From IMG/VR virus record IMGVR_UViG_3300024308_000188, positions 62,001 through 126,000 of that record: a stretch of 64,000 bases of DNA, one strand, 5' to 3'. Shown piece by piece: positions 4,688 through 64,000 of the stretch. Below the pieces are notes generated by a model that did no database searches, was not told the DNA's origin, and saw only the letters and a list, made by a program, of their open reading frames with translations. Position numbers and translations under genes: made by a program. The stretch's first letter is position 1, and every line of letters begins with the position of its first letter.

Positions 4688-6382
4688 TTATGCTTCAATG
4701 CCTGTAAAAGTGCTGCCCTTCGGATTCAAATTGAAACGAACGTGTACACGTTTTGTTGCAATAGTCGGATCATAAAGCATGTCCAATACTAAATCGCCGT
4801 TTGCAATTAAATCTTTAGTGTTATTTCTTTCATCACATTGGTTATTGAAATATTCAACACCACGGCCAGCTTTAATTGGACGCATAAAATCATCAGCACT
4901 TGTTTTGATACTTGCACGTAAGAAAGCATCGTTTGGATCAAACAATTTATTCTCTGTGTAAGTTTTGCTGGCTTTCAAAATGTGAAGTGAAAGTGCAACT
5001 ACGTTAGCATCACGGAAAGCACTTGCACGAGCAAGCAATGTATTCTGTGACCATAAGCAGTAACCTAAACCATCTGGAAGTTTACGCACGTAGTTAACTT
5101 GAGCTTGTTCCAGAGCATCACGAGCACCTTGATCATATTCATGGCGAACACCAAGAATATTTTGCAGAGTACCATTCTCCATACCAGCAGCGGCAAACCA
5201 AAGAGCACGATTACTTGCGGTAAATGCCATACGTTGTGCAACGTCACCACTGATAGGAATATAAAGCTGGCGATCAGTGAATGTATCGTAAATCAAAATA
5301 TCAGGGCCGTACATGCCACCCCAAAAGGTATTAGCATTTAATGTTTGACGACGATAAGCAACACTGTTTGAAACTTCTTGCATATTACTTGGTGTATCAA
5401 GAATTGCATAAGCATCACCGCGCTGTTCAGCCAATTGCAACATTTTGTGTTGAATCAAATGGTGAGTGTAACCAGCGTTTACTAACAAGCTGATGTCAAT
5501 TTGTTCAGGATCTGAGTAAGCATCCCAAGCATTAACTATTTGAGTTACTGTGGCGCGTTGGCCATCATCACCGCCAGCCAAAGTTTCGTGGGCAGAAGTA
5601 ACGAATTCGTATTGAGCGCCAAACAATTCGTTGTGTTTGAAATCAATGTATTTACTGTTGACGTTAATAACATCTTCAATATACATTTGCTCGCCGTTCT
5701 CGTTAACTTCTTGAGTTAAACTAACAGTAAACTTTTCAATCGGTGCTATACCAGCAGCAAATGCTCCGTAATAAACATAAACATTCAAATGTTTTGGGTT
5801 GTGGCCATTTGAACGTAATGGAACACCAGCTGGATTTGATGGGCCAACAGCAACAGTTATTTGATTATTCCAAGCACCTGGATCTTTGGCGCTAAAGAAA
5901 CCAGTTACGTTTTGAATTCCAGGAGTTGTTGCAAGAAATCCAATATTTTTCATTGGATCTTCATTGCCTTCAGGAACATTAGATCCGGCAACAGAATTAT
6001 TTGTTAAGCGCATTACAGGATTAACAGCAGCCGGATCATCAACAGTCAACCAAGCAAAAGCAGTTTTAGCCTGATTGACAACACGCACGAAAAACGCACG
6101 GTTAGTATTTCTTAAGTTACGATCTAAACAGTAACCAGCAAATCCATATTTTTGTGGATTCAGATCGCCAAGCTTAGCACGACGATCTTCATTGTCGGTT
6201 ACGAAAATAGGTGTATTCGGTTTACCACGTTGAGCTTCGCCAACATAAGCCGGAATACTTGAGGAAACGAGTGGAAATCTTTCAGAAGCGTCTTTAATAT
6301 ATCCGTAGACACCAGGTGCCGGATTTGAAGGGTTAATCATAGCGTTTTTGCTCCATTGACAATACTTTTTCAGTATAGACAT
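4688..6382 (-). CDS. Contractile tail sheath protein (start may be ATG of MINPSN at ~6340)
   Basis: N-terminal PGVYGYIKDAS...SIPAYVGEAQRGKPNTPIFVT, middle GAWNNQITV and LAGGDDG, C-terminal DLIANGDLVLDMLYDP are sheath-family motifs. Confidence 0.9.
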   Translation of the reverse strand: MSILKKYCQWSKNAMINPSNPAPGVYGYIKDASERFPLVSSSIPAYVGEAQRGKPNTPIFVTDNEDRRAKLGDLNPQKYGFAGYCLDRNLRNTNRAFFVRVVNQAKTAFAWLTVDDPAAVNPVMRLTNNSVAGSNVPEGNEDPMKNIGFLATTPGIQNVTGFFSAKDPGAWNNQITVAVGPSNPAGVPLRSNGHNPKHLNVYVYYGAFAAGIAPIEKFTVSLTQEVNENGEQMYIEDVINVNSKYIDFKHNELFGAQYEFVTSAHETLAGGDDGQRATVTQIVNAWDAYSDPEQIDISLLVNAGYTHHLIQHKMLQLAEQRGDAYAILDTPSNMQEVSNSVAYRRQTLNANTFWGGMYGPDILIYDTFTDRQLYIPISGDVAQRMAFTASNRALWFAAAGMENGTLQNILGVRHEYDQGARDALEQAQVNYVRKLPDGLGYCLWSQNTLLARASAFRDANVVALSLHILKASKTYTENKLFDPNDAFLRASIKTSADDFMRPIKAGRGVEYFNNQCDERNNTKDLIANGDLVLDMLYDPTIATKRVHVRFNLNPKGSTFTGIEA

Positions 6383-6420
6383 AAATTATGGAGTTTTGAC
6401 AATGATTAAATTTTGAGGTA

Positions 6421-6450
6421 GAAAAAGAAAAGGGATCGCAAGATCCCTTT
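6421..6450 (-). terminator. Intrinsic terminator
   Basis: AAAGGGATC-GCAA-GATCCCTTT hairpin followed by a U-tract on the minus strand, just after the J-domain gene stop. Confidence 0.8.
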
Positions 6451-6455
6451 GTTGG

Positions 6456-7364
6456 CTAGTCGAATTCAGTTTGTTTGAATCTAAACTTTTCGGCTTTAGC
6501 CATTCTGATTTGTTCTGAAATTAAATTAATCGCAGTACGCATCAAAGCATAGCTATCACCAAATTGTTCATAAGCAGCGCACAGCATTCCACGAGGACTC
6601 AGTAAAATTGATTTTACTTCTTCCTGAATTTGTATTGCCTGTGCCTTCAATTCTTCAACTCTGCGCTTCAATTTTTCGGCAGCAGCTTTCTTAGAGAATT
6701 TGCTGGCTTTTTTATTCTTGGTTATTTTTAATTCATCGAGTAATGTACGAAGTTCATCAAAAGCATGTGCTTCTAATAAAGTTTTCGCATGATCGTACAT
6801 TGCTTTGCTGAAATCACTTCCCAATTTATCTGGATGCAGAACTCTATTAAGTTCTTTCTTGAGAGCTTTATACAACTTTTGAATTTGCTTATCCGACAAT
6901 TTAGGTTTTTCATTAGCACTAATTGTCTGACTTTCATTTAAAGCTCGAAGTCTTTCAAGAATTTCTTTACCAGCAGCTCCTTCCTGTTTCATACGAAGCA
7001 TTTCCTGCTTTAAATTTTCTTCGTATTTTTCGCGCTCAATCATGTTTTCTGCTATAAGCATATTTAATTCATGAAAGAGTTCCATATAGGTCGGATATTT
7101 AGAAAGTGTTTTATTAACCTGTTCCTCAAGAGATTCAACATGAGCCTTGATTATCTTGTTTTCATCGATCTTGCGCTGCCAGTATTGAATTTGATTTTCG
7201 ATACTGGTCAGATCTATATTTGATTCGTCAAATAATACAGGCAAATATACTTCTGTTCGGACATCAGGTTCCGATGTTTTTTCTTCAAACTGTTCTGGAA
7301 TATCTGGACGGGCTTTATCCCATCCTATCCATCTAGGTCGCATATCGTTACTTGAGCCGAACAT
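6456..7364 (-). CDS. J-domain (DnaJ-like) protein with long coiled coil
   Basis: IQKLYKALKKELNRVLHPDKLG: helix II plus HPD motif of J-domains. Confidence 0.65.
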   Translation of the reverse strand: MFGSSNDMRPRWIGWDKARPDIPEQFEEKTSEPDVRTEVYLPVLFDESNIDLTSIENQIQYWQRKIDENKIIKAHVESLEEQVNKTLSKYPTYMELFHELNMLIAENMIEREKYEENLKQEMLRMKQEGAAGKEILERLRALNESQTISANEKPKLSDKQIQKLYKALKKELNRVLHPDKLGSDFSKAMYDHAKTLLEAHAFDELRTLLDELKITKNKKASKFSKKAAAEKLKRRVEELKAQAIQIQEEVKSILLSPRGMLCAAYEQFGDSYALMRTAINLISEQIRMAKAEKFRFKQTEFD

Positions 7365-54500: not shown

Positions 54501-55520
54501 GTGAGTAAAGAAAATTTAACAGGCGGTCAAATACAAGAAATAATGGACACGCTTTTATATAAAGCACTTGAACCAATAGTGATCCATACAAATGTCTTTG
54601 ACAGTCAACTTATCTATTTACTAACCGCTGTTATAAAAAACAAAAAACGAAAGTTTTGTGCTCTTGAAAGATCTCAGACCATAGACATTTTGGCACAAGC
54701 CATAGTTTGTCCTGACCGCATTCGTAAGTTCGAGCTGATCAAAAAACTTAAGATCGAAAGATCTTTTGTTCATGTTTTCATAAAGAAATTTTTAGCAGAA
54801 TACAAAGACGTATATATGGAACTTTATTTCCATTATATGAGCGAACCGAAGCGAAGAAATTTTTATCGGGATCGGATGGTTCCGTACAAAGCTCTTTTAG
54901 GTGCAGATAGTATACAAGATGTTTTTGTGGCTATCACCCAACCTTCTGAGTATCTGGCCTTATTCTACAAATATTTCAACAGTGTTGTTGAGCAGTATCA
55001 TAAGTTTTGTTATACACATGCAAAACATTTGATTGATACAAACACTGGAAATAACTACGACTACAAAGATGTGGTGCAAAACTTTTTGCGTAATGTTGTG
55101 GTAGCACTAAACAAATATGACAGCAGCAAAGGCGCTTTAACGTCATATATAAAGTATTGGATTCTCAACAGTCTTACTTGTGCAAGTTCTGAACATGAAT
55201 ATGGAATAGCTTATGTTATCCCACAGAACCACAAGAAAACTTTGAGTGGTGGTCATAGTTCAAATGTAAACTTTTCAACTTCAATGGACACCTTACTTTC
55301 TCAGGGTGAAGATGAAGATGGAAATTTACATGAATTACTTACGGCAGAAACAGAAGATCTTTCTGATGAACATGCTGTCGATCATGAACTAAGGCGATTA
55401 TATCTCATGGCAAAAAGAGCAGATCCTTTTGGATTGGCCAGACTTACGCTTGAGATACCAGAGGTATTTACTGAGGCAGAGCTAGAGTTAATGGAACGGC
55501 ATACTCTGTCTAAACTGTAA
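54501..55520 (+). CDS. Phage RNA polymerase sigma factor (sigma70 family, region 2)
   Basis: DVVQNFLRNVVVALNKYDSSKGALTSYIKYWI parallels region 2.2-2.3 (DLIQ..N.GL..A..KFD..KG..FSTYA.WWI). Confidence 0.7.
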   Translation: MSKENLTGGQIQEIMDTLLYKALEPIVIHTNVFDSQLIYLLTAVIKNKKRKFCALERSQTIDILAQAIVCPDRIRKFELIKKLKIERSFVHVFIKKFLAEYKDVYMELYFHYMSEPKRRNFYRDRMVPYKALLGADSIQDVFVAITQPSEYLALFYKYFNSVVEQYHKFCYTHAKHLIDTNTGNNYDYKDVVQNFLRNVVVALNKYDSSKGALTSYIKYWILNSLTCASSEHEYGIAYVIPQNHKKTLSGGHSSNVNFSTSMDTLLSQGEDEDGNLHELLTAETEDLSDEHAVDHELRRLYLMAKRADPFGLARLTLEIPEVFTEAELELMERHTLSKL

Positions 55521-56673: not shown

Positions 56674-59556
56674 ATGGCTAAAAAGAAAAAGTTAGACATT
56701 GATGACGACGTTGTTGTAGAAGAACCAAAGAAAAAGGGTAAATCAAAAGGCAAGTCTGCTAAAGAAATTGTAGACTCTGCTATTGAAGATGCTCGCGGTT
56801 ATTCTCCAGCTGACGACATTGATGATTTGCTTGATAGTGTTGAAAAGAAATATGGCCTTTCCAGCAGTTTGGTTGACCGTGATGAAAAAAGATTATCCAC
56901 AGGGCTGTTGGCTCTTGATCTATTGCTTAACGGCGGTATTGTTGGTGGCGGTTGGTACACTATTTATGGCGGTGAGCAAAGCTGTAAATCGACATTAACA
57001 ATGACTCTTCTCTGCATGATTCAGAATGCTATTGATGAATTAAACAGAAAAATTGCTGCCAGTATTTTTGATTACGAAGGATCTACTGATATTGAATATA
57101 TTGGTAACATGATGGAAGCACTTGGATTAAAATCTGATGCTACTACAATATTCGGAATCAAAGATGACGACACTGGTTCTTGGTTGATTAAACCAAAAAT
57201 TCGTTATTACATGCCTGATGTTGGTGAAGATTTTTATCGTTACCAAGCAAAACTTCGTCGCGCACTTCCTGATGTACAAAAAATCGGTGACAAGTATTGG
57301 TATGTTTACGAACATACTCAAGAAAATAAGAAAAAGTTTGCTGGAAAATACGATGTTAAGTATTTGACTAAAACAAATAAAATTCGTATTCCTGCTCCAG
57401 ATGGCTTTATGCAAGCAGTATCAATCGTTGATAGTTATCCGGCCATGTTGCCTGAAGGCTTAGATGATGATGATCGTAATGAAGCTATGGCAGAACAAGC
57501 ACGTATGCACGCTGCTGGTATTAAAAAAGTACGAAGCGGTATGCGTAAAAAACGTATGACTGTTTTTGGTGTAAACCAATTACGTTTACGTCCTGCTGTT
57601 ATGCACGGTAATCCTGAGTATGAGCCTTCCGGGGAAGCGCTCAAATTTTTCTGTATGACTGGAGATACTTTCATTCATTCAGAGAAAGGTATGCTAACTG
57701 CCTTTGAATATTATCAAGAATGCAGCAAAGCTAAAAAGCTTCCAAAACTTCTTGGTTATCAAGGCATCGAACGTCCTACAATATTCGACACTACTGGTCG
57801 TAGTTCTATACTTGAGTTAAAAACTGAATACGGATTTTCAATAGCTGGAAAGCCAAGTCATCGAACAATGATGATTAAGTCTGGCGGCTGGAAATACGAC
57901 TGGAAGAAATTGAATCAAGTTGTAGGCGCTACAGATTATTATGTTCCAGTGAAAGTTGGCTCTGATGTTTGGGCTAAAAATCCTGCAACATTTGATTATG
58001 AGCATTATTCAAAACAGAGTAATGAGCAACAAGTAGTTAGCATTCCAAATGTTCTCACACAAGATCTTGCATTCGTTCTTGGAGCTTTATCTGGTGATGG
58101 ACACGTTACTGGTGAAAACGGTCTTGTTCAGTTTATTTCTGGTGATGTAGATTTCTTTGCTGAGTATTGTGATCGTATCTACGATGTGTTTGGAATTGAA
58201 CCTACTATTAAGACTATAGGTAACGCACAAGAGGCTCGAATTTATTCGACTGAGGTTGCGGGATTCCTTTCATATCTAGGTGCTACTGGTTATTCTCGAA
58301 GCAAAGAAGTTCCACGTTGCATTCGTATTTCACCTAAGAAATTCTTTGTTGAATTCTTACGTGGATATTTGAATGCAGATGGAAATGTTTCTTCAAAAGA
58401 AGTAAGTGCTAATAGTAATTCAAAAGCCTTACTTAATGTAATACAACAGCTTTGCTTGAATGCCGGAATTATTACAAAGCTTTCAATGAGCGAAACTAAG
58501 TATCATAAAGAGTCTAAGTTGAATGAACTGCATCGCATTAGCTTTGTTTCTTCATCAGTGAACGACTTGAACTTAATGATGTCTGAGTTCGGCGGCTTAT
58601 GTGAACGCAAACAGAAGCTGTTAGATGACACTATTACCAAAGTAAATAATGGTAATCAGTTTTATAACATTGATGTATTGCCATTTGATTTGATTAGCTA
58701 TGATTCTGTCCGTAGTGACTTTAAACTTAAGTCACATATTGAATCTGCAAAAGGCAGACGCAAACTATATCGTTTGTCTGACTTCGATTCATCTTGGGTA
58801 GATGAAGCAAATCAGATCATTGCTTCTTGTCGTACAGAACAAGAACGTAGTCGGAATAGTCGGATATTAGCTGACTTGATTGAGTTCTTGAACTATACAA
58901 CAAAAAACAATTTGCTTTGGACTAAAGTTGTCGATGTTGATCGTAACCGATCTGAAGAAATGACTTACGATGCAAACATGCCAGACACCCATACAATTAT
59001 CACTAACGGAATTGTTAGCCATAACTCCGATGTGAGGATAAAATCTACTTCTCGTGGATCTGCTCCATACGGTTTTGTTCTTGACAAAGGCATCATGGAA
59101 GAAAATTCTGTGACTGTTGAAGGCGGTAAAGATATTTATCGTTTCATCTGTTTGCGTACTGTCAAAAACAAACTCGGTGGTATTCCTAACCGTGAAGTTT
59201 GGGCGCGTGTTTGGGTTACTGATGGTGATGGTCGTGCTCGTGGATTCGATCCAGTTTTTGATACCTTCGAGTATTTAAAGCAACTTGGTTATGTTGATGG
59301 AACACGGAACAATCTAAAGTTCCATCCAGATGTTCCACTGCATGGTGCTAAAAAATTAAGCTTTGAAGATTTCAAAGTTCTTGTTCTTGGTAGTAAAAAA
59401 CAAATCACCGAAGTTTGTGAGCGAGTTGGTTTGAAGAAAGCTGGAAACATTCGTACATGGTGTTCTAAACATTGTGCAAGTGGAAAAGGCCCGAAACGCT
59501 ACAAAGATCAAATCGTCAAACGCAGTAAAGAAAAAATCGATACTGATGACGAATAA
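56674..59556 (+). CDS. recA: RecA/UvsX-like recombinase interrupted by an intein (~502 aa after splicing)
   Basis: LSTGLLALDLLLNGG, YGGEQSCKST, IVDSYPAM, AEQARM, NQLR, GEALKFF|SDVR, TVKNK. Confidence 0.9.
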   Translation: MAKKKKLDIDDDVVVEEPKKKGKSKGKSAKEIVDSAIEDARGYSPADDIDDLLDSVEKKYGLSSSLVDRDEKRLSTGLLALDLLLNGGIVGGGWYTIYGGEQSCKSTLTMTLLCMIQNAIDELNRKIAASIFDYEGSTDIEYIGNMMEALGLKSDATTIFGIKDDDTGSWLIKPKIRYYMPDVGEDFYRYQAKLRRALPDVQKIGDKYWYVYEHTQENKKKFAGKYDVKYLTKTNKIRIPAPDGFMQAVSIVDSYPAMLPEGLDDDDRNEAMAEQARMHAAGIKKVRSGMRKKRMTVFGVNQLRLRPAVMHGNPEYEPSGEALKFFCMTGDTFIHSEKGMLTAFEYYQECSKAKKLPKLLGYQGIERPTIFDTTGRSSILELKTEYGFSIAGKPSHRTMMIKSGGWKYDWKKLNQVVGATDYYVPVKVGSDVWAKNPATFDYEHYSKQSNEQQVVSIPNVLTQDLAFVLGALSGDGHVTGENGLVQFISGDVDFFAEYCDRIYDVFGIEPTIKTIGNAQEARIYSTEVAGFLSYLGATGYSRSKEVPRCIRISPKKFFVEFLRGYLNADGNVSSKEVSANSNSKALLNVIQQLCLNAGIITKLSMSETKYHKESKLNELHRISFVSSSVNDLNLMMSEFGGLCERKQKLLDDTITKVNNGNQFYNIDVLPFDLISYDSVRSDFKLKSHIESAKGRRKLYRLSDFDSSWVDEANQIIASCRTEQERSRNSRILADLIEFLNYTTKNNLLWTKVVDVDRNRSEEMTYDANMPDTHTIITNGIVSHNSDVRIKSTSRGSAPYGFVLDKGIMEENSVTVEGGKDIYRFICLRTVKNKLGGIPNREVWARVWVTDGDGRARGFDPVFDTFEYLKQLGYVDGTRNNLKFHPDVPLHGAKKLSFEDFKVLVLGSKKQITEVCERVGLKKAGNIRTWCSKHCASGKGPKRYKDQIVKRSKEKIDTDDE
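57652..59025 (+). mobile_element. Intein with LAGLIDADG homing endonuclease (458 aa)
   Basis: Starts CMTGDTFI, ends IITNGIVSHN followed by Ser; blocks LAFVLGALSGDGH and EFLRGYLNADG. Confidence 0.95.
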
Positions 59557-61552: not shown

Positions 61553-61558
61553 AAGTTT

Positions 61559-61684
61559 TGCTGGTGCGGAAATGTTAGGTAATTTAAACATAACTTACTC
61601 AGTTTGTTATTACACTCACAAGGCTTTTGGTTTAGGGGTGAAAGTAGAACATTAAACCTGAACTTCTAGCTTTCCGCACCAGCA
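61559..61684 (+). ncRNA. Candidate structured RNA closed by a perfect 14-bp stem
   Basis: TGCTGGTGCGGAAA (61559-61572) / TTTCCGCACCAGCA (61671-61684); inner stems ATAAC/GTTAT and CACTC/GGGTG. Confidence 0.5.
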
Positions 61685-61704
61685 CTTTATTAAGGTACAC
61701 TCAA

Positions 61705-62127
61705 ATGAAACCTATAGTTTTAGTAAATAGTAAAAAGTTTTTAGAACAACTTGGTGACGTAAGTGCCAGTTTAAAAGTCAACAAAAATATTTTTACTCAC
61801 CATGTTCCATCTGATCCAACAAAAGATTTTATTTTGTTGGTTCCACAGAATTATTCATTTCTTACCGTGCAGGCTCACAGTATCAGTGGAGCAACAGATA
61901 TTTTCTACACAGCTTCTGATATAAAACTTGCAAATATTCCTGATCTTCCGGCTGATGGAGGAATACAGGAAAAATTTATTACAGCCGATTGGATGTTATC
62001 TGATCTGCTTACCGGAATTCCAGCTGGTGAAACTAAAATGGAATCCATTGAACATCTTGTAACAGCAGTTAAGATAGTCACAACTGGCGAAGCCCGTATA
62101 GTTCTGTCTATCAAAGACAGTATATAA
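61705..62127 (+). CDS. Hypothetical protein
   Basis: AAGG SD; 140 aa. Confidence 0.65.
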   Translation: MKPIVLVNSKKFLEQLGDVSASLKVNKNIFTHHVPSDPTKDFILLVPQNYSFLTVQAHSISGATDIFYTASDIKLANIPDLPADGGIQEKFITADWMLSDLLTGIPAGETKMESIEHLVTAVKIVTTGEARIVLSIKDSI

Positions 62128-62129
62128 AT

Positions 62130-62520
62130 TTCCCTGACCTGCCAAACTTTGCATGTATTTGTTTGGCAACTAAACTCAGGAACTGGATTGTGTCTGCGCT
62201 ACATCCTTTCCGATAGTTTGTGTAAGAATTTCTTACGGTCTTTTTTATTTCGGCACTCTAGCGTCCTCTAAGTGCTGTTTCTGGTCGCAAGACTGGTTTT
62301 ACAAAACAAGCTTATTCGTTTGCATCGACATGCGAGATACGTGAGTAGCTGTCATGAGAAATTCTTTGTTTTGTATTAGCGCCACCGAATCTGATTGGCG
62401 ATCTGATCACGTTTATCAAAGCATATAAGATAGATGGTTATAGTGTAATGCTTTCCACTAGAAGCTGTTTGTTGAAATTGCTTTTCAGTGACTTTCCATG
62501 TTTCAACAGGTAAACATGGT
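62130..62520 (+). ncRNA. Candidate large structured RNA immediately 5' of the tRNA
   Basis: 390 nt with no ORF over 25 aa, packed with stems; G-U pairs and a GCAA tetraloop are all consistent with the plus strand. Confidence 0.45.
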
Positions 62521-62524
62521 TAAT

Positions 62525-62599
<75 letters not shown>

Positions 62600-62618
62600 T
62601 TTTCAACAGGTAACAAAA

Positions 62619-62702
62619 ATGCTTCCAGATTATTCAGAATTAAAACCCTATCTGCTTTCTCTTGTTTTAGTTTTTGTTATTTTGATTGCGCTTAGTTTTT
62701 GA
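62619..62702 (+). CDS. 27-aa single-pass membrane peptide (not in track)
   Basis: MLPDYSELKPYLLSLVLVFVILIALSF*; CAGGT SD-like sequence upstream. Confidence 0.4.
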   Translation: MLPDYSELKPYLLSLVLVFVILIALSF

Positions 62703-62832
62703 TTCCAACACTAAACTTATTTCAGTTAGCTAAGTAACTTAAGATAGTCCTGCACTTAGCCGCGTAGGAGACTATGAAAAGTTTGTGGTTTAAGTGTATC
62801 ACTGAACAGGAATCTTTATTTGGTAATCATTT

Positions 62833-63165: not shown

Positions 63166-63640
63166 ATTCCACTTTAGATCTGCAAGCAGAGACATTTTTT
63201 GTCTTAGGTCAGAACAGCCGTTGCTTGTGCGCTGGTATGCAGTGCAAAGTTTATTATGTCAAGCTAGATCCCTTGACTAGACTTTATACGAAGTAGCCTA
63301 ACTTCGAGATTTTTAGTGGAATCTCCTTTAACATCTTTGTCTGTTCGATCTCCTTTTAGGTACGTGGGGTTCCAAGCAAGTTGTGTCGAACAGGCATTCT
63401 AATTTTTCGCGGCATTAGTTTAAGCAGTCCTTGAAAAAGTTTTGTGTGAGGCGGATTCTTCCTTGCCGCTGTGCTGATGAACTTATAGAGGAAAAACAAC
63501 GAGACAATACTTGCGTCCCTCCAAGTCGGTTAGTATTGTGAGTATCTCACGCACTCATTCGTTATTTCAAAACATGAACGTGCTGACGCGAACTCCCGCT
63601 GAGAGTACAAACCTTAATCTAGCATTAAGCAATGTTTAGA
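63164..63640 (+). ncRNA. Candidate large multi-domain structured RNA
   Basis: Stems AGATTCCACT/AGTGGAATCT, GTCAAG/CTTGAC, CGAAG/CTTCG, TGTCTGTTCGA/TCGAACAGGCA, ACAATACT/AGTATTGT; no ORF over ~21 aa on the plus strand. Confidence 0.45.
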
Positions 63641-63850
63641 CTTTGAATTGTTGTAGGTTTTTGGACTTTTTTCCTTGCTCCAATTCTTGGGTCGTGTATT
63701 TGAAATGCCGCTATACAGGAATATTCATGGTAACTATATTCATCTTTTTTCTAACGATTTGTATTAACCGCGAAAACAATTTACGGCGGTCATCCGTAGA
63801 AAGTTTTCGTATAACAACTAACATTCAACGCATAACAGATTACTTTGACC

Positions 63851-64000
63851 TTAAAGGTTGGTTAACTGTTCGCGTTGTACAAGTTGAGCATAAACCTGCT
63901 CACTATAAGCACTCGTTGATATGATGCTTGGCGATTTGTTATTTACATGACTCCTTATCTTGTTGAGAGGGTAAGAACAAATCTCGGTAGCCGTAATACC
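63851..64000 (-). CDS. Possible 3' end of a gene starting beyond the window
   Basis: Frame open from 64000 to TAA at 63851 (...AYSEQVYAQLVQREQLTNL*). Confidence 0.3.
   Translation of the reverse strand, partial: GITATEICSYPLNKIRSHVNNKSPSIISTSAYSEQVYAQLVQREQLTNL

What the first reader, a model, noticed from the sequence alone, without database searches (positions are those of the whole stretch)
62130..62520. ~390-nt ornate non-coding segment directly upstream of tRNA-Gly
Seen: nested or consecutive stems TTCC(C)TGA/TCAGGAA, TGCCAAAC/GTTTGGCA, GTAAGA/TCTTAC, GGCACT/AGTGCT, CTGGTC-GCAA-GACTGG, TACAAAACAA/TTGTTTTGTA, CGCCA/TGGCG, AGAAGC/GCTTTT and CCATGTTT/AAACATGG. All wobbles favour the plus strand. 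Large structured RNAs such as GOLLD are known to lie next to phage tRNA genes; I cannot assign this one to any family, so it may be a new class.
Basis: partly seen in the sequence, partly recalled or inferred. Interest (0 to 1): 0.68.

Follow-up and report, generated by a model that had tools for sequence, protein, structure and literature searches.

The report
New structured RNA in jumbo phages
The ~390-base stretch just upstream of a phage tRNA-Gly gene is a real, conserved, folded non-coding RNA that matches no described RNA family and occurs only in a small clade of environmental jumbo phages; what it does is still unknown.

Summary
All nine stems exist at the stated places, there is no conserved ORF, and the plus strand folds better than shuffles (z -2.3) while the minus strand does not (z -1.0). 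The window is part of a 214-kb jumbo-phage contig. In an ~82%-identical relative the segment is 91.8% identical, like the tRNA (92.0%), against 73-84% for neighbouring genes. It differs by six 1-nt indels, three compensatory pairs and plus-strand G-U changes. More distant relatives carry a 255-320 nt RNA at the same place, right after the stop codon of the same 130-140 aa gene. It shares collinear blocks with the window RNA (P2, P3, CGAC, UGACUUU, terminal hairpin). In five such relatives 21 of 79 pairs changed on both sides (shuffles 5.8 +/- 2). Rfam 15 matches only tRNAs, so this is an undescribed family in about a dozen contigs. Adjacency to tRNA-Gly is specific to this lineage. Relatives put ORFs between RNA and tRNAs or lack tRNAs, and one complete relative lacks the RNA. 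My best reading is a stable RNA co-transcribed with tRNA-Gly and released by tRNA processing. Function is inferred only. A second conserved ~1.07-kb non-coding region lies downstream.

The parts
61705..62127 (+). Upstream 140-aa gene, the constant neighbour. In every lineage the RNA starts 0-3 nt after its stop codon.
   Evidence: The family has only 5 representatives among 1.84 billion proteins and 10 clusters. Synteny is shown. The predicted fold is beta-rich (pLDDT 70) with no significant PDB match.
62128..62280 (+). 5' domain found only in the window lineage ('type A'). It holds hairpins 62140-62168 (loop UUUGCAUGUAUUU), 62222-62236 and 62251-62277, plus a less certain stretch at 62169-62221.
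   Evidence: It is 94.2% identical to L004. C62167T and A62224G give G-U pairs. The distant relatives have no counterpart. Apart from the conservation and the two G-U changes, the helices here rest on thermodynamic prediction.
62281..62296 (+). P2 hairpin CUGGUC-GCAA-GACUGG with a GNRA loop.
   Evidence: The homologous hairpin in relatives is CCGGUAG...CUACUGG. Four pairs align in register across types and all are paired.
62300..62375 (+). P3 long-range helix (62300-62310 with 62365-62375, and 62315-62317 with 62358-62360). It encloses hairpins 62319-62336 (CGAC loop) and 62340-62356.
   Evidence: L004 has two compensatory pairs (A-U to C-G and A-U to G-C) and one mismatch. The homologous helix in relatives has 7 pairs changed on both sides. 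Across types there are 3 such pairs.
62380..62400 (+). P5 hairpin CGCCA...UGGCG.
   Evidence: L004 has a compensatory A-U to U-A change. The hairpin at the same position in relatives has 5 of 8 pairs changed on both sides.
62418..62490 (+). 3' domain with two hairpins: P7 (AAAGCAU 62418-24 with AUGCUUU 62448-54) and P8 (CACUAGAAGC 62456-65 with GCUUUUCAGUG 62480-90).
   Evidence: In this two-hairpin model every L004 and L002 substitution falls in a loop or gives G-U, and a 1-nt deletion at 62482 in the P8 stem only resizes a bulge. The RNAalifold alternative has broken pairs. The layout parallels the covarying hairpins of the relatives. The closing helix is unresolved.
62489..62519 (+). Invariant UGACUUU followed by terminal hairpin P9 (CCAUGUUU-CAACAGGU-AAACAUGG).
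   Evidence: UGACUUU and the GUUUCAA...AAAC core are identical in all 8 lineages. The outer stem covaries: U-A/A-U/G-C and A-U/G-C/C-G.
62525..62599 (+). tRNA-Gly (anticodon TCC), the only tRNA of the 214-kb contig.
   Evidence: ARAGORN and Rfam, 59.6 bits.
62601..62613 (+). Second copy of the 13-nt direct repeat TTTCAACAGGTAA. The first copy, 62501-62513, is the P9 loop and 3' stem. The two copies bracket the tRNA.
   Evidence: In L004/L005 both copies change in the same direction, to CAATAAGTAA and CAATAGGTAA. Relatives have CUUUUCAA 8-14 nt after P9 with no tRNA between.
62619..62702 (+). 27-aa hydrophobic ORF (MLPDYSELKPY...), so part of the apparent gap after the tRNA is coding.
   Evidence: It stays in frame in L005 with no indels. 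Its PDYSE.K motif recurs in the 41-aa ORF that follows tRNA-Gly in L019.
63166..64000 (+). Start of a second conserved non-coding region. It runs on to about window position 64231, 1066 nt in all, and ends in a terminator before thymidylate kinase.
   Evidence: It is homologous in all lineages, including those without the 390-nt RNA or without tRNAs. It has no Rfam hit.

Best explanation
Window 62128-62520 encodes a plus-strand structured non-coding RNA of a family that has not been described. Shown: it is conserved as strongly as the neighbouring tRNA. It is not coding. It has homologues in related jumbo phages at the same place, directly after the stop codon of the same 130-140 aa gene. Those homologues share a multi-helix architecture supported by covariation: P2, the long P3 helix around a CGAC-bearing insert, P5, a two-hairpin 3' domain, an invariant UGACUUU, and a terminal hairpin with a conserved CAA-rich loop. 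Inferred: in the window lineage the RNA is made as part of a longer plus-strand transcript that runs through the 140-aa gene into tRNA-Gly. RNase P cleavage at the tRNA 5' end, 5 nt after the last hairpin, would then set the RNA's 3' end and release a stable, compact RNA. This is how T4 makes the small RNAs of its tRNA cluster. I think it most likely acts in trans as a folded scaffold. It would bind a protein or another RNA through its invariant single-stranded motifs (UGACUUU, CGAC, and hairpin loops carrying UUGCAU/UGCAUG). It is an accessory rather than an essential function, because one complete relative lacks it.
For: Conservation: 91.8% identity to L004, against 92.0% for the tRNA and 73-84% for flanking genes, with six 1-nt indels.
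Substitution pattern against L004 and L002: 3 compensatory pairs, 3 G-U-compatible changes and 19 changes in unpaired positions. The 4 broken pairs are mostly at helix ends.
Strand: z -2.27 on plus against -1.01 on minus, and G-U-creating substitutions fit only the plus strand.
Family: relatives L017-L021 and L032 (type C) and L013 (type B) carry an RNA at the same syntenic position.
Covariation in type C: 79 pairs, 97.2% paired, 21 pairs changed on both sides against 5.8 +/- 2.0 in shuffles (0 of 500) and 2-4 when the partners are slid.
Cross-type helices P2 and P3: 94.9% paired, with 3 pairs (7 cells) changed on both sides.
P9 covaries among the three types.
No Rfam family matches.
Transcription: the over-represented promoter-like motif (A)AACTGTAAATA occurs 14 times in the genome against 1.6 expected. 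It sits immediately before the RNA in L013 and before the tRNA cluster in L019. In the window no copy lies between 55515 and the tRNA, which implies that the RNA and tRNA-Gly are co-transcribed.
Precedent: small RNAs of unknown role are made from the T4 tRNA region (PMC3014915), and GOLLD and ROOL lie near phage tRNA islands (bioRxiv 10.1101/2024.12.08.627333).
Against: Transcript ends, stability and processing are therefore all inferred. The window-type RNA has only two diverged lineages. Its 150-nt 5' domain rests on thermodynamics plus two G-U changes, and the closing helix of the molecule is unresolved, with three competing partners for 62485-62491. Homology between the window type and the distant types is not significant in a blind search: the covariance model of type C recovers only the terminal hairpin (E 1.1), and nhmmer gives E 0.13 for L004 and E 6 for the window copy. 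The homology case rests on synteny plus collinear blocks. The constant position right after a stop codon would also fit a cis-acting 3'-UTR element. A complete relative (286 kb) has no copy. No ligand, partner or activity can be read from the sequence.
Confidence: 0.55

Rival explanations
1. It is a cis-acting element of the upstream gene's mRNA. A large structured 3' UTR begins at the stop codon of the 140-aa gene and protects the transcript from 3' exonucleases, or controls its decay or translation. It would not be a free-standing RNA.
For: In all three structural types the RNA starts 0-3 nt after the stop codon of the same gene family, whereas what follows it differs (tRNA-Gly, a 98-aa ORF, or more non-coding sequence). 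In the window lineage and in type C no promoter-like motif separates gene and RNA.
Against: A 3' stabiliser needs a hairpin, not 255-390 nt with 8 or more covarying helices and invariant single-stranded motifs. In L013 a promoter-like motif sits between the gene and the RNA. The L011 phage keeps the gene without the RNA.
Confidence: 0.17
2. It is a cis-regulatory leader, riboswitch-like or attenuator-like. A large sensor domain would use its P1 helix and the adjacent terminal hairpin P9 to decide whether transcription continues into the downstream tRNA and small genes.
For: In the type C relatives the 3' strand of P1 abuts P9 directly, and U-rich sequence follows P9 within 2-8 nt. This is the usual layout of an aptamer followed by an expression platform.
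Against: The downstream genes are not conserved (tRNA-Gly; a 98-aa ORF; none before tmk in L013). P9 is AU-rich with a conserved loop, and in the window lineage no U tract follows it (GGUUAAUGCGGG). No riboswitch or T-box model matches, even weakly.
Confidence: 0.1
3. It is the variable 5' module of a much larger bipartite RNA locus. The conserved ~1.07-kb non-coding region before thymidylate kinase would be the 3' module. The tRNA(s) and small ORFs would be insertions in the linker, as in GOLLD, where tRNAs sometimes sit in the linker.
For: In L013 the two non-coding parts are contiguous (953 nt with no ORF or tRNA). The 3' region is homologous in all lineages and carries covarying long helices and a terminator. 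GOLLD has a variable 5' region and a conserved 3' region, with tRNAs sometimes in its linker.
Against: In the window lineage a 27-aa and a 110-aa ORF lie between the two parts. They show no frame-breaking indels and are less conserved than the RNA, as coding sequence would be. The L011 phage has the 3' region without the 5' RNA. No complementarity or joint covariation between the two parts was examined. No GOLLD or ROOL model hit was found.
Confidence: 0.13
4. It is not a functional RNA. It would be a DNA-level element (origin, packaging or recombination site) or a decaying remnant whose stems are incidental.
For: The single-sequence folding signal is modest (z -2.27). The region is a hot spot of rearrangement, with tRNA gain and loss, HNH endonuclease genes and a truncated tRNA.
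Against: Conservation exceeds that of the neighbouring genes. Compensatory and G-U substitutions are strand-specific. Covariation in relatives is far above both controls. A decaying remnant would not be as conserved as the adjacent tRNA.
Confidence: 0.05

Closest known systems
GOLLD RNA (Rfam RF01998)
   Same: It is a phage- or prophage-encoded, elaborately structured RNA of unknown function, often near tRNA islands. It has a variable 5' part and a conserved 3' part, and tRNAs are sometimes inside the locus. Here too a structured RNA lies in a phage tRNA region, with a second, more widely conserved non-coding region downstream.
   Different: No match to the GOLLD model even at E <= 10. GOLLD members often exceed 800 nt, whereas this RNA is 255-393 nt. 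No shared motif was seen. Multimer or nanocage formation was not tested here.
ROOL RNA (Rfam RF03087)
   Same: It is a large ornate RNA of phages and prophages, often near tRNA islands, with no known protein partner and no known function.
   Different: No model match. The size and helix layout differ. ROOL is widespread, whereas this family is confined to about a dozen contigs of one jumbo-phage clade.
Phage T4 RNAC and RNAD (small RNAs of the tRNA cluster)
   Same: They are small stable RNAs transcribed from the phage tRNA region, and their roles are still unknown (PMC3014915). From my own knowledge, they are co-transcribed with tRNAs and released by tRNA-processing nucleases, which is the processing route I infer here.
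   Different: From my own knowledge, the T4 RNAs are only about 120-140 nt. No sequence comparison was run. The RNA here is two to three times larger, has many more helices, and is tied in position to a protein gene rather than to the tRNAs.
Large cis-regulatory leaders (T-box, cobalamin and similar riboswitches)
   Same: They have a similar size range (200-300 nt), a multi-helix sensor closed by a P1 helix, and a following hairpin.
   Different: No Rfam match. The downstream genes are not conserved. The terminal hairpin is not a canonical terminator in the window lineage.

Membership tests
GOLLD (RF01998) | Match to the family covariance model at or above its gathering score | tested here: not met
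   cmscan of the window, the window-lineage locus L007 and relatives gives no GOLLD hit, at gathering score or at E <= 10.
GOLLD (RF01998) | Length often above 800 nt, with a conserved 3' region and a variable 5' region | tested here: not met
   The segment is 393 nt and its homologues are 255-320 nt. A variable-5'/conserved-3' pattern exists only if the separate 1.07-kb downstream region is counted.
GOLLD / ROOL | Location in phages or prophages near tRNA genes | tested here: met
   In the window it lies 5 nt upstream of tRNA-Gly. In L019 it lies about 0.9 kb upstream of tRNA-Met and tRNA-Gly. Two lineages with the RNA (L013, L020) have no tRNA nearby.
GOLLD / ROOL | Assembly into RNA-only homo-multimers (nanocages) | not testable with these tools
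   This needs cryo-EM or native gels. The only hint is palindromic tetranucleotides (UGCA, CAUG) in conserved hairpin loops.
ROOL (RF03087) | Match to the family covariance model | tested here: not met
   No hit at E <= 10.
T-box / riboswitch leaders | Match to a family model, and a conserved regulated gene downstream | tested here: not met
   No Rfam hit. The downstream neighbour differs between lineages.
tRNA-cluster small RNAs of T4 (RNAC, RNAD) | Co-transcription with tRNAs and release by tRNA-processing nucleases | not testable with these tools
   This is inferred only. No promoter-like motif lies between window position 55515 and the tRNA, and the spacer before the tRNA is 5 nt. No read data could be obtained.
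Protein-coding gene | An open frame conserved among relatives | tested here: not met
   The ORFs are at most 40 aa. Six 1-nt indels separate the window from L004.

The most novel reading that the evidence does not exclude
The 390-nt RNA is the lineage-variable 5' module of a bipartite giant RNA locus. The universally conserved ~1.07-1.3 kb non-coding region before thymidylate kinase would be the 3' module. The tRNA(s) and mini-ORFs would sit in the linker. This would be a GOLLD-like architecture evolved independently in jumbo phages, possibly assembling into a higher-order RNA particle through the palindromic loop motifs.
Probability: 0.13. Interest if true: 0.85.

Novelty: new variant of a known kind. 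Interest (0 to 1): 0.6.

Why it matters
Large, elaborately folded phage RNAs near tRNA genes (GOLLD, ROOL) remain without a known function even though their structures are solved. Each independent family with the same genomic setting helps show what that setting requires. This family is compact (255-390 nt). It comes in three structural versions that share one core. It has a fixed protein-gene neighbour, and one natural relative lacks it. These features give natural comparisons for genetics and probing. It also sits in a roughly 2.5-kb stretch where every intergenic piece is more conserved than the genes, including a second non-coding region of about 1.07 kb with clear covarying helices. This suggests that jumbo phages of this clade invest heavily in RNAs that annotation pipelines miss.

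Tried and rejected
1. Rfam: six searches, at gathering score and at E <= 10, on the window and on relatives gave only tRNAs and chance hits.
2. Exact and degenerate DNA pattern scans. The 30-nt core in IMG/VR found only the near-identical 319-kb contig. A degenerate two-gap pattern in IMG/VR gave 8 hits, all unrelated coding or other sequence on inspection. A strict pattern in JGI metagenomes found only the window's own contig. A pattern for the downstream region in IMG/VR found only the two known relatives.
3. A covariance model built from the type C relatives (R1) found in the window only the terminal hairpin (E 1.1). It found no further copy in the three whole phage records. nhmmer gave E 0.13 for L004 and E 6 for the window copy. 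Blind-search significance for homology between types was therefore not reached, and the homology case rests on synteny plus collinear blocks.
4. The upstream 140-aa protein was folded (pLDDT 70, beta-rich) and searched against the PDB. No match reached E <= 0.001, and the best hits were generic beta-sandwiches. This gives no hint of RNA binding and no functional lead. Pfam and PHROGs also found nothing.
No read data were therefore laid on the segment, and I did not try to get them another way.
6. Stop-codon read-through of the 140-aa gene into the in-frame 48 codons that follow was rejected, because a 1-nt insertion in L004 breaks that frame.
7. Reading the terminal hairpin as a genome-wide repeated signal was rejected. 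The genome has only a handful of loosely similar sites, on both strands; their context was not checked.
8. Reading the terminal hairpin as a tRNA-like T-loop or a CCA end was rejected on inspection. The UUU/AAA pairs are part of the stem, and CCA is present only in the window lineage.
9. MAFFT alignments of the terminal hairpin and of the downstream 3' domain were out of register, so those pairs were counted by script or read directly.

Full report
**Context.** The window is bases 62001-126000 of a 214,526-bp IMG/VR virus record (JGI contig Ga0247725_1000036), with CheckV completeness 85% and about 38% G+C. The genes around the finding are on the plus strand. They encode a sigma factor, an SSB, a UvsX recombinase split by a LAGLIDADG intein, a NUDIX-like protein and three small proteins without family. 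The sigma factor is about 45% identical to those of Erwinia, Dickeya and Pseudomonas jumbo phages. The contig has a single tRNA, tRNA-Gly(TCC), at window 62525-62599.

The plus strand folds to -104 kcal/mol against -92.4 +/- 5.1 for dinucleotide shuffles (z -2.27; 1 of 100 shuffles as good). The minus strand gives z -1.01. This signal alone is suggestive at best. The segment holds only ORFs of 40 aa or less.

**Close relatives.**
- A 319.5-kb complete relative (L002) is 98.5% identical over 3 kb and differs at 2 positions in the segment.
- A second lineage, assembled from run SRR18593711 (L004 and L005), is about 82% identical overall.
- Against that lineage the segment is 91.8% identical and the tRNA 92.0%. 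The flanking genes are 72.8% (140 aa), 76.3% (113 aa), 77.8% (110 aa) and 83.9% (NUDIX-like).
- The six gaps in the segment are all single bases, so no frame is kept.
- I placed the substitutions on a curated fold. Three pairs are compensated: two in the long helix 62300-62310/62365-62375 and one in hairpin 62380-62400. Two substitutions in L004 and one in L002 turn a Watson-Crick pair into G-U on the plus strand. Eighteen L004 substitutions lie in unpaired positions. Four pairs are broken.
- Three of the broken pairs lie at helix ends in 62169-62211. An alternative register there (GGA-N-UGUG with UACRUCC) turns one of them into a further plus-strand G-U. That stretch remains the least certain part.
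- The two-hairpin model for 62418-62490 fits the variation better than the RNAalifold model, which has broken pairs.

**Distant relatives.**
- A profile of the upstream 140-aa protein found only five cluster representatives among 1.84 billion proteins. A word-indexed search found ten clusters.
- Their contigs keep the gene order UvsX, small ORF, NUDIX-like gene, small ORF, 130-140 aa gene. In all but one lineage the last gene is followed at once by 255-400 nt of non-coding sequence.
- I call the three versions type A (window, L002, L004; 393 nt), type B (L013-L016; about 320 nt) and type C (L017-L022, L032; about 255 nt).
- The versions share collinear blocks:
  - a hairpin ending in CUGG, followed by UUUUACAA (UUCUAAAA in L018, UUUUAUAA in L032);
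  - AUUCG (AUCG in L018 and L032);
  - an unpaired CGAC (AGAC in L019);
  - UAGCU, then 4-5 nt, then UGAGAA (UAGUU...UGAGAU in L018, ...UGAGAU in L032);
  - the returning strand UUGUA (UUUUA in L018, UUAUA in L032);
  - a hairpin;
  - AUC-GAUCA;
  - two hairpins;
  - an invariant UGACUUU;
  - a terminal hairpin with the core GUUUCAA...AAAC.
- Type B shares clearly only the last two blocks and a few short motifs.
- In a blind search this similarity is weak. nhmmer gives E 0.13 for L004 and E 6 for the window copy in 0.49 Mb, although L004 is the top hit. The covariance model of type C aligns only the terminal hairpin (E 1.1).
- Homology between types therefore rests on identical genomic position plus the order of the blocks. 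I consider it likely, not proven.

**Covariation.**
- In five type C sequences the consensus fold has 79 pairs in 11 helices, and 97.2% of cells are paired.
- Twenty-one of these pairs changed on both sides. Shuffles give 5.8 +/- 2.0 (0 of 500 reach 21), and sliding the partners gives 2-4.
- On an alignment of type A with type C, the hairpin P2 and the outer part of helix P3 are in register. There are 13 pairs with 94.9% of cells paired, and 3 pairs (7 cells) changed on both sides. Sliding gives 0-1.
- The terminal hairpin keeps three U-A pairs and one G-C pair. The next positions read U-A, A-U and G-C, then A-U, G-C and C-G, in types A, C and B respectively.
- Together with the compensations inside type A, this supports P2, P3, P5 and P9 in the window RNA directly.
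- The type-A-specific 5' domain (62128-62280) is supported only by high conservation (94.2%), folding energy and two G-U changes.

**What it is not.** No Rfam 15 family matches the segment or its relatives, at gathering score or at E <= 10. GOLLD, ROOL, riboswitches, T-box, RNase P RNA, tmRNA and 6S RNA are in that library and are therefore not matched; introns and self-cleaving ribozymes, as far as Rfam holds them, are not matched either. Scans of IMG/VR and the JGI metagenomes returned only this clade. The family is thus rare, with about a dozen contigs, mostly Logan assemblies of single runs.

**Relation to the tRNA.**
- Direct adjacency is peculiar to the window lineage.
- In L019 the RNA is followed by a 135-nt non-coding piece, a 98-aa ORF, a 107-aa ORF, then tRNA-Met and tRNA-Gly.
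- In L020 and L021 an HNH endonuclease gene stands where L019 has the 107-aa ORF. L020 has no tRNA; in L021 a partial tRNA lies at the contig end just after the HNH gene.
- L013 has no tRNA and no ORF before thymidylate kinase.
- In the window the tRNA is bracketed by a 13-nt direct repeat, at 62501-62513 and 62601-62613. Relatives have a related CUUUUCAA motif 8-14 nt after the hairpin with nothing in between. The tRNA therefore looks like an insertion into that short spacer.
- The complete 286.6-kb relative (L011) keeps the upstream gene and the tRNAs but has only 160 nt where the RNA should be. It has no copy elsewhere.

**Transcription.** The motif (A)AACTGTAAATA occurs 14 times in the genome against 1.6 expected for its 9-base core CTGTAAATA. 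Many copies lie in intergenic sequence or at gene ends, for example before the sigma-factor and SSB genes in the window (54459, 55515). It also sits directly before the RNA in L013 and before the tRNA cluster in L019. I take it for a phage promoter, which is an inference. In the window no copy lies between 55515 and the tRNA. The RNA and tRNA-Gly are therefore probably parts of one transcript that also carries the upstream genes, and RNase P cleavage 5 nt after the last hairpin would free the RNA.

**Function.** Nothing in the sequence names a function. The upstream protein is a beta-rich protein with no informative structural match. Several features suggest recognition of the folded RNA by a partner. 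The invariant unpaired motifs are UGACUUU and, with one exception, CGAC. Hairpin loops carry UUGCAU or UGCAUG, though in different hairpins in types A and C. The type C P2 loops carry the palindrome CAUG, and the type C P5 loop carries UGCA. This last point is a post hoc observation. My preferred reading is a stable trans-acting scaffold RNA made from a tRNA-linked transcript, as with T4 RNAC and RNAD and in the genomic setting of GOLLD and ROOL. The rivals are a 3'-UTR element of the upstream gene, a leader controlling read-through, one half of a larger bipartite RNA, or no RNA function at all. Each is weighed in its own section of this report.

**Wider picture.**
- The segment is one of several conserved non-coding pieces. 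Against L004/L005, the intergenic stretches 61553-61704 (88.8%) and 62703-62832 (96.1% outside one insertion) are all more conserved than the small genes between them. So is the region from 63166 to about 64231 (about 85%).
- In that call the last interval was set 168 nt too long and so includes the start of thymidylate kinase.
- The last region is homologous in every lineage. It shares GGGGUUCC, GYAUUAGUUUA and GURCAUAUUACA.
- It contains a 20-bp helix (ATAGATTTTTGTTCTGACGG with CCGTCAGAACAAAAATCTAT). One pair of that helix is compensated in L005, and the whole helix is replaced by different complementary sequences in L019 and L013.
- It ends in a terminator whose stem also covaries.
- It has no Rfam match.
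- It deserves its own analysis.

**Verdict.** The interpretation as a new structured phage RNA is supported. The mechanism is inferred only.

Noticed in passing
window 63166-64000, continuing to about 64231 in the genome; L005 678-1745; L019 5680-6866; L011 12654-13940; L013 about 6246-6867: A second conserved non-coding region lies before thymidylate kinase. It is about 1.07 kb in the window lineage and up to 1.3 kb elsewhere, and it is homologous in all lineages. It shares the motifs GGGGTTCC, GYATTAGTTTA and GTRCATATTACA. It has a 20-bp helix with compensatory changes and a covarying terminator. It has no Rfam match. It may be a larger novel RNA than the one under review.
   Followed up: partly
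window 62703-62832; L005 about 290-340: This 130-nt intergenic piece is 96% identical between lineages. In L005 it carries a 49-nt insertion that looks like a tRNA minihelix: acceptor stem GCCTCTG/CAGAGGC, a T-arm-like hairpin and ACCA. ARAGORN does not call it.
   Followed up: no
window 61553-61704: This 152-nt intergenic stretch is closed by a perfect 13-bp stem (GCTGGTGCGGAAA with TTTCCGCACCAGC) around about 100 nt. It is 88.8% conserved against 73-76% for the flanking genes. It is another candidate structured element.
   Followed up: no
window 62501-62513 and 62601-62613: An exact 13-nt direct repeat, TTTCAACAGGTAA, brackets tRNA-Gly. Both copies change in the same direction in the 82% relative. 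This suggests that the tRNA was inserted into a short spacer, or that gene conversion acts between the copies.
   Followed up: partly
window 62619-62702: An unannotated 27-aa hydrophobic ORF (MLPDYSELKPYLLSLVLVFVILIALSF) lies right after the tRNA. It stays in frame in L005. Its PDYSE.K motif recurs in a 41-aa ORF after tRNA-Gly in L019.
   Followed up: partly
window 54459, 55515 and 12 other sites in the genome; L013 5918; L019 5157; L011 11905: The motif (A)AACTGTAAATA occurs 14 times against 1.6 expected, many copies lying in intergenic sequence or at gene ends. It is probably the promoter of a phage-directed transcription class, and the phage encodes its own sigma factor at 54501-55520.
   Followed up: partly
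window 56674-59556: The UvsX/RecA recombinase gene carries an intein with a LAGLIDADG endonuclease (960 aa). The intein is also present in the L013 lineage (973 aa). It is absent from L004, L011 and L017-L020 (497-515 aa).
   Followed up: no
L019 5181-5225 and 5231-5308; L020 4776-5528; L021 2344-3042: This region is a hot spot of tRNA turnover. L019 has a truncated 5' half of a tRNA-Met just before an intact tRNA-Met. L020 and L021 have an HNH endonuclease gene where L019 has the 107-aa ORF; L020 has no tRNA, and L021 has a partial tRNA at its contig end.
   Followed up: no
L017 4729-4785; L019 4735-4790; L011 11945-12000: A small conserved hairpin carries the tandem GGCACCTAGCTGGCACCTAAG inside an AT-rich stem. 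It is present in the type C phages and in the phage that lacks the main RNA.
   Followed up: no
L017 4276-4414; L019 4304-4438: In type C phages the RNA is followed by a further conserved non-coding module of about 135 nt. It has a long hairpin (CUGCCUGU...ACAGGCA) with CGAC in its loop in most members (L019 has GACGAAC), then a short hairpin followed by a run of U, before the 98-aa ORF.
   Followed up: no
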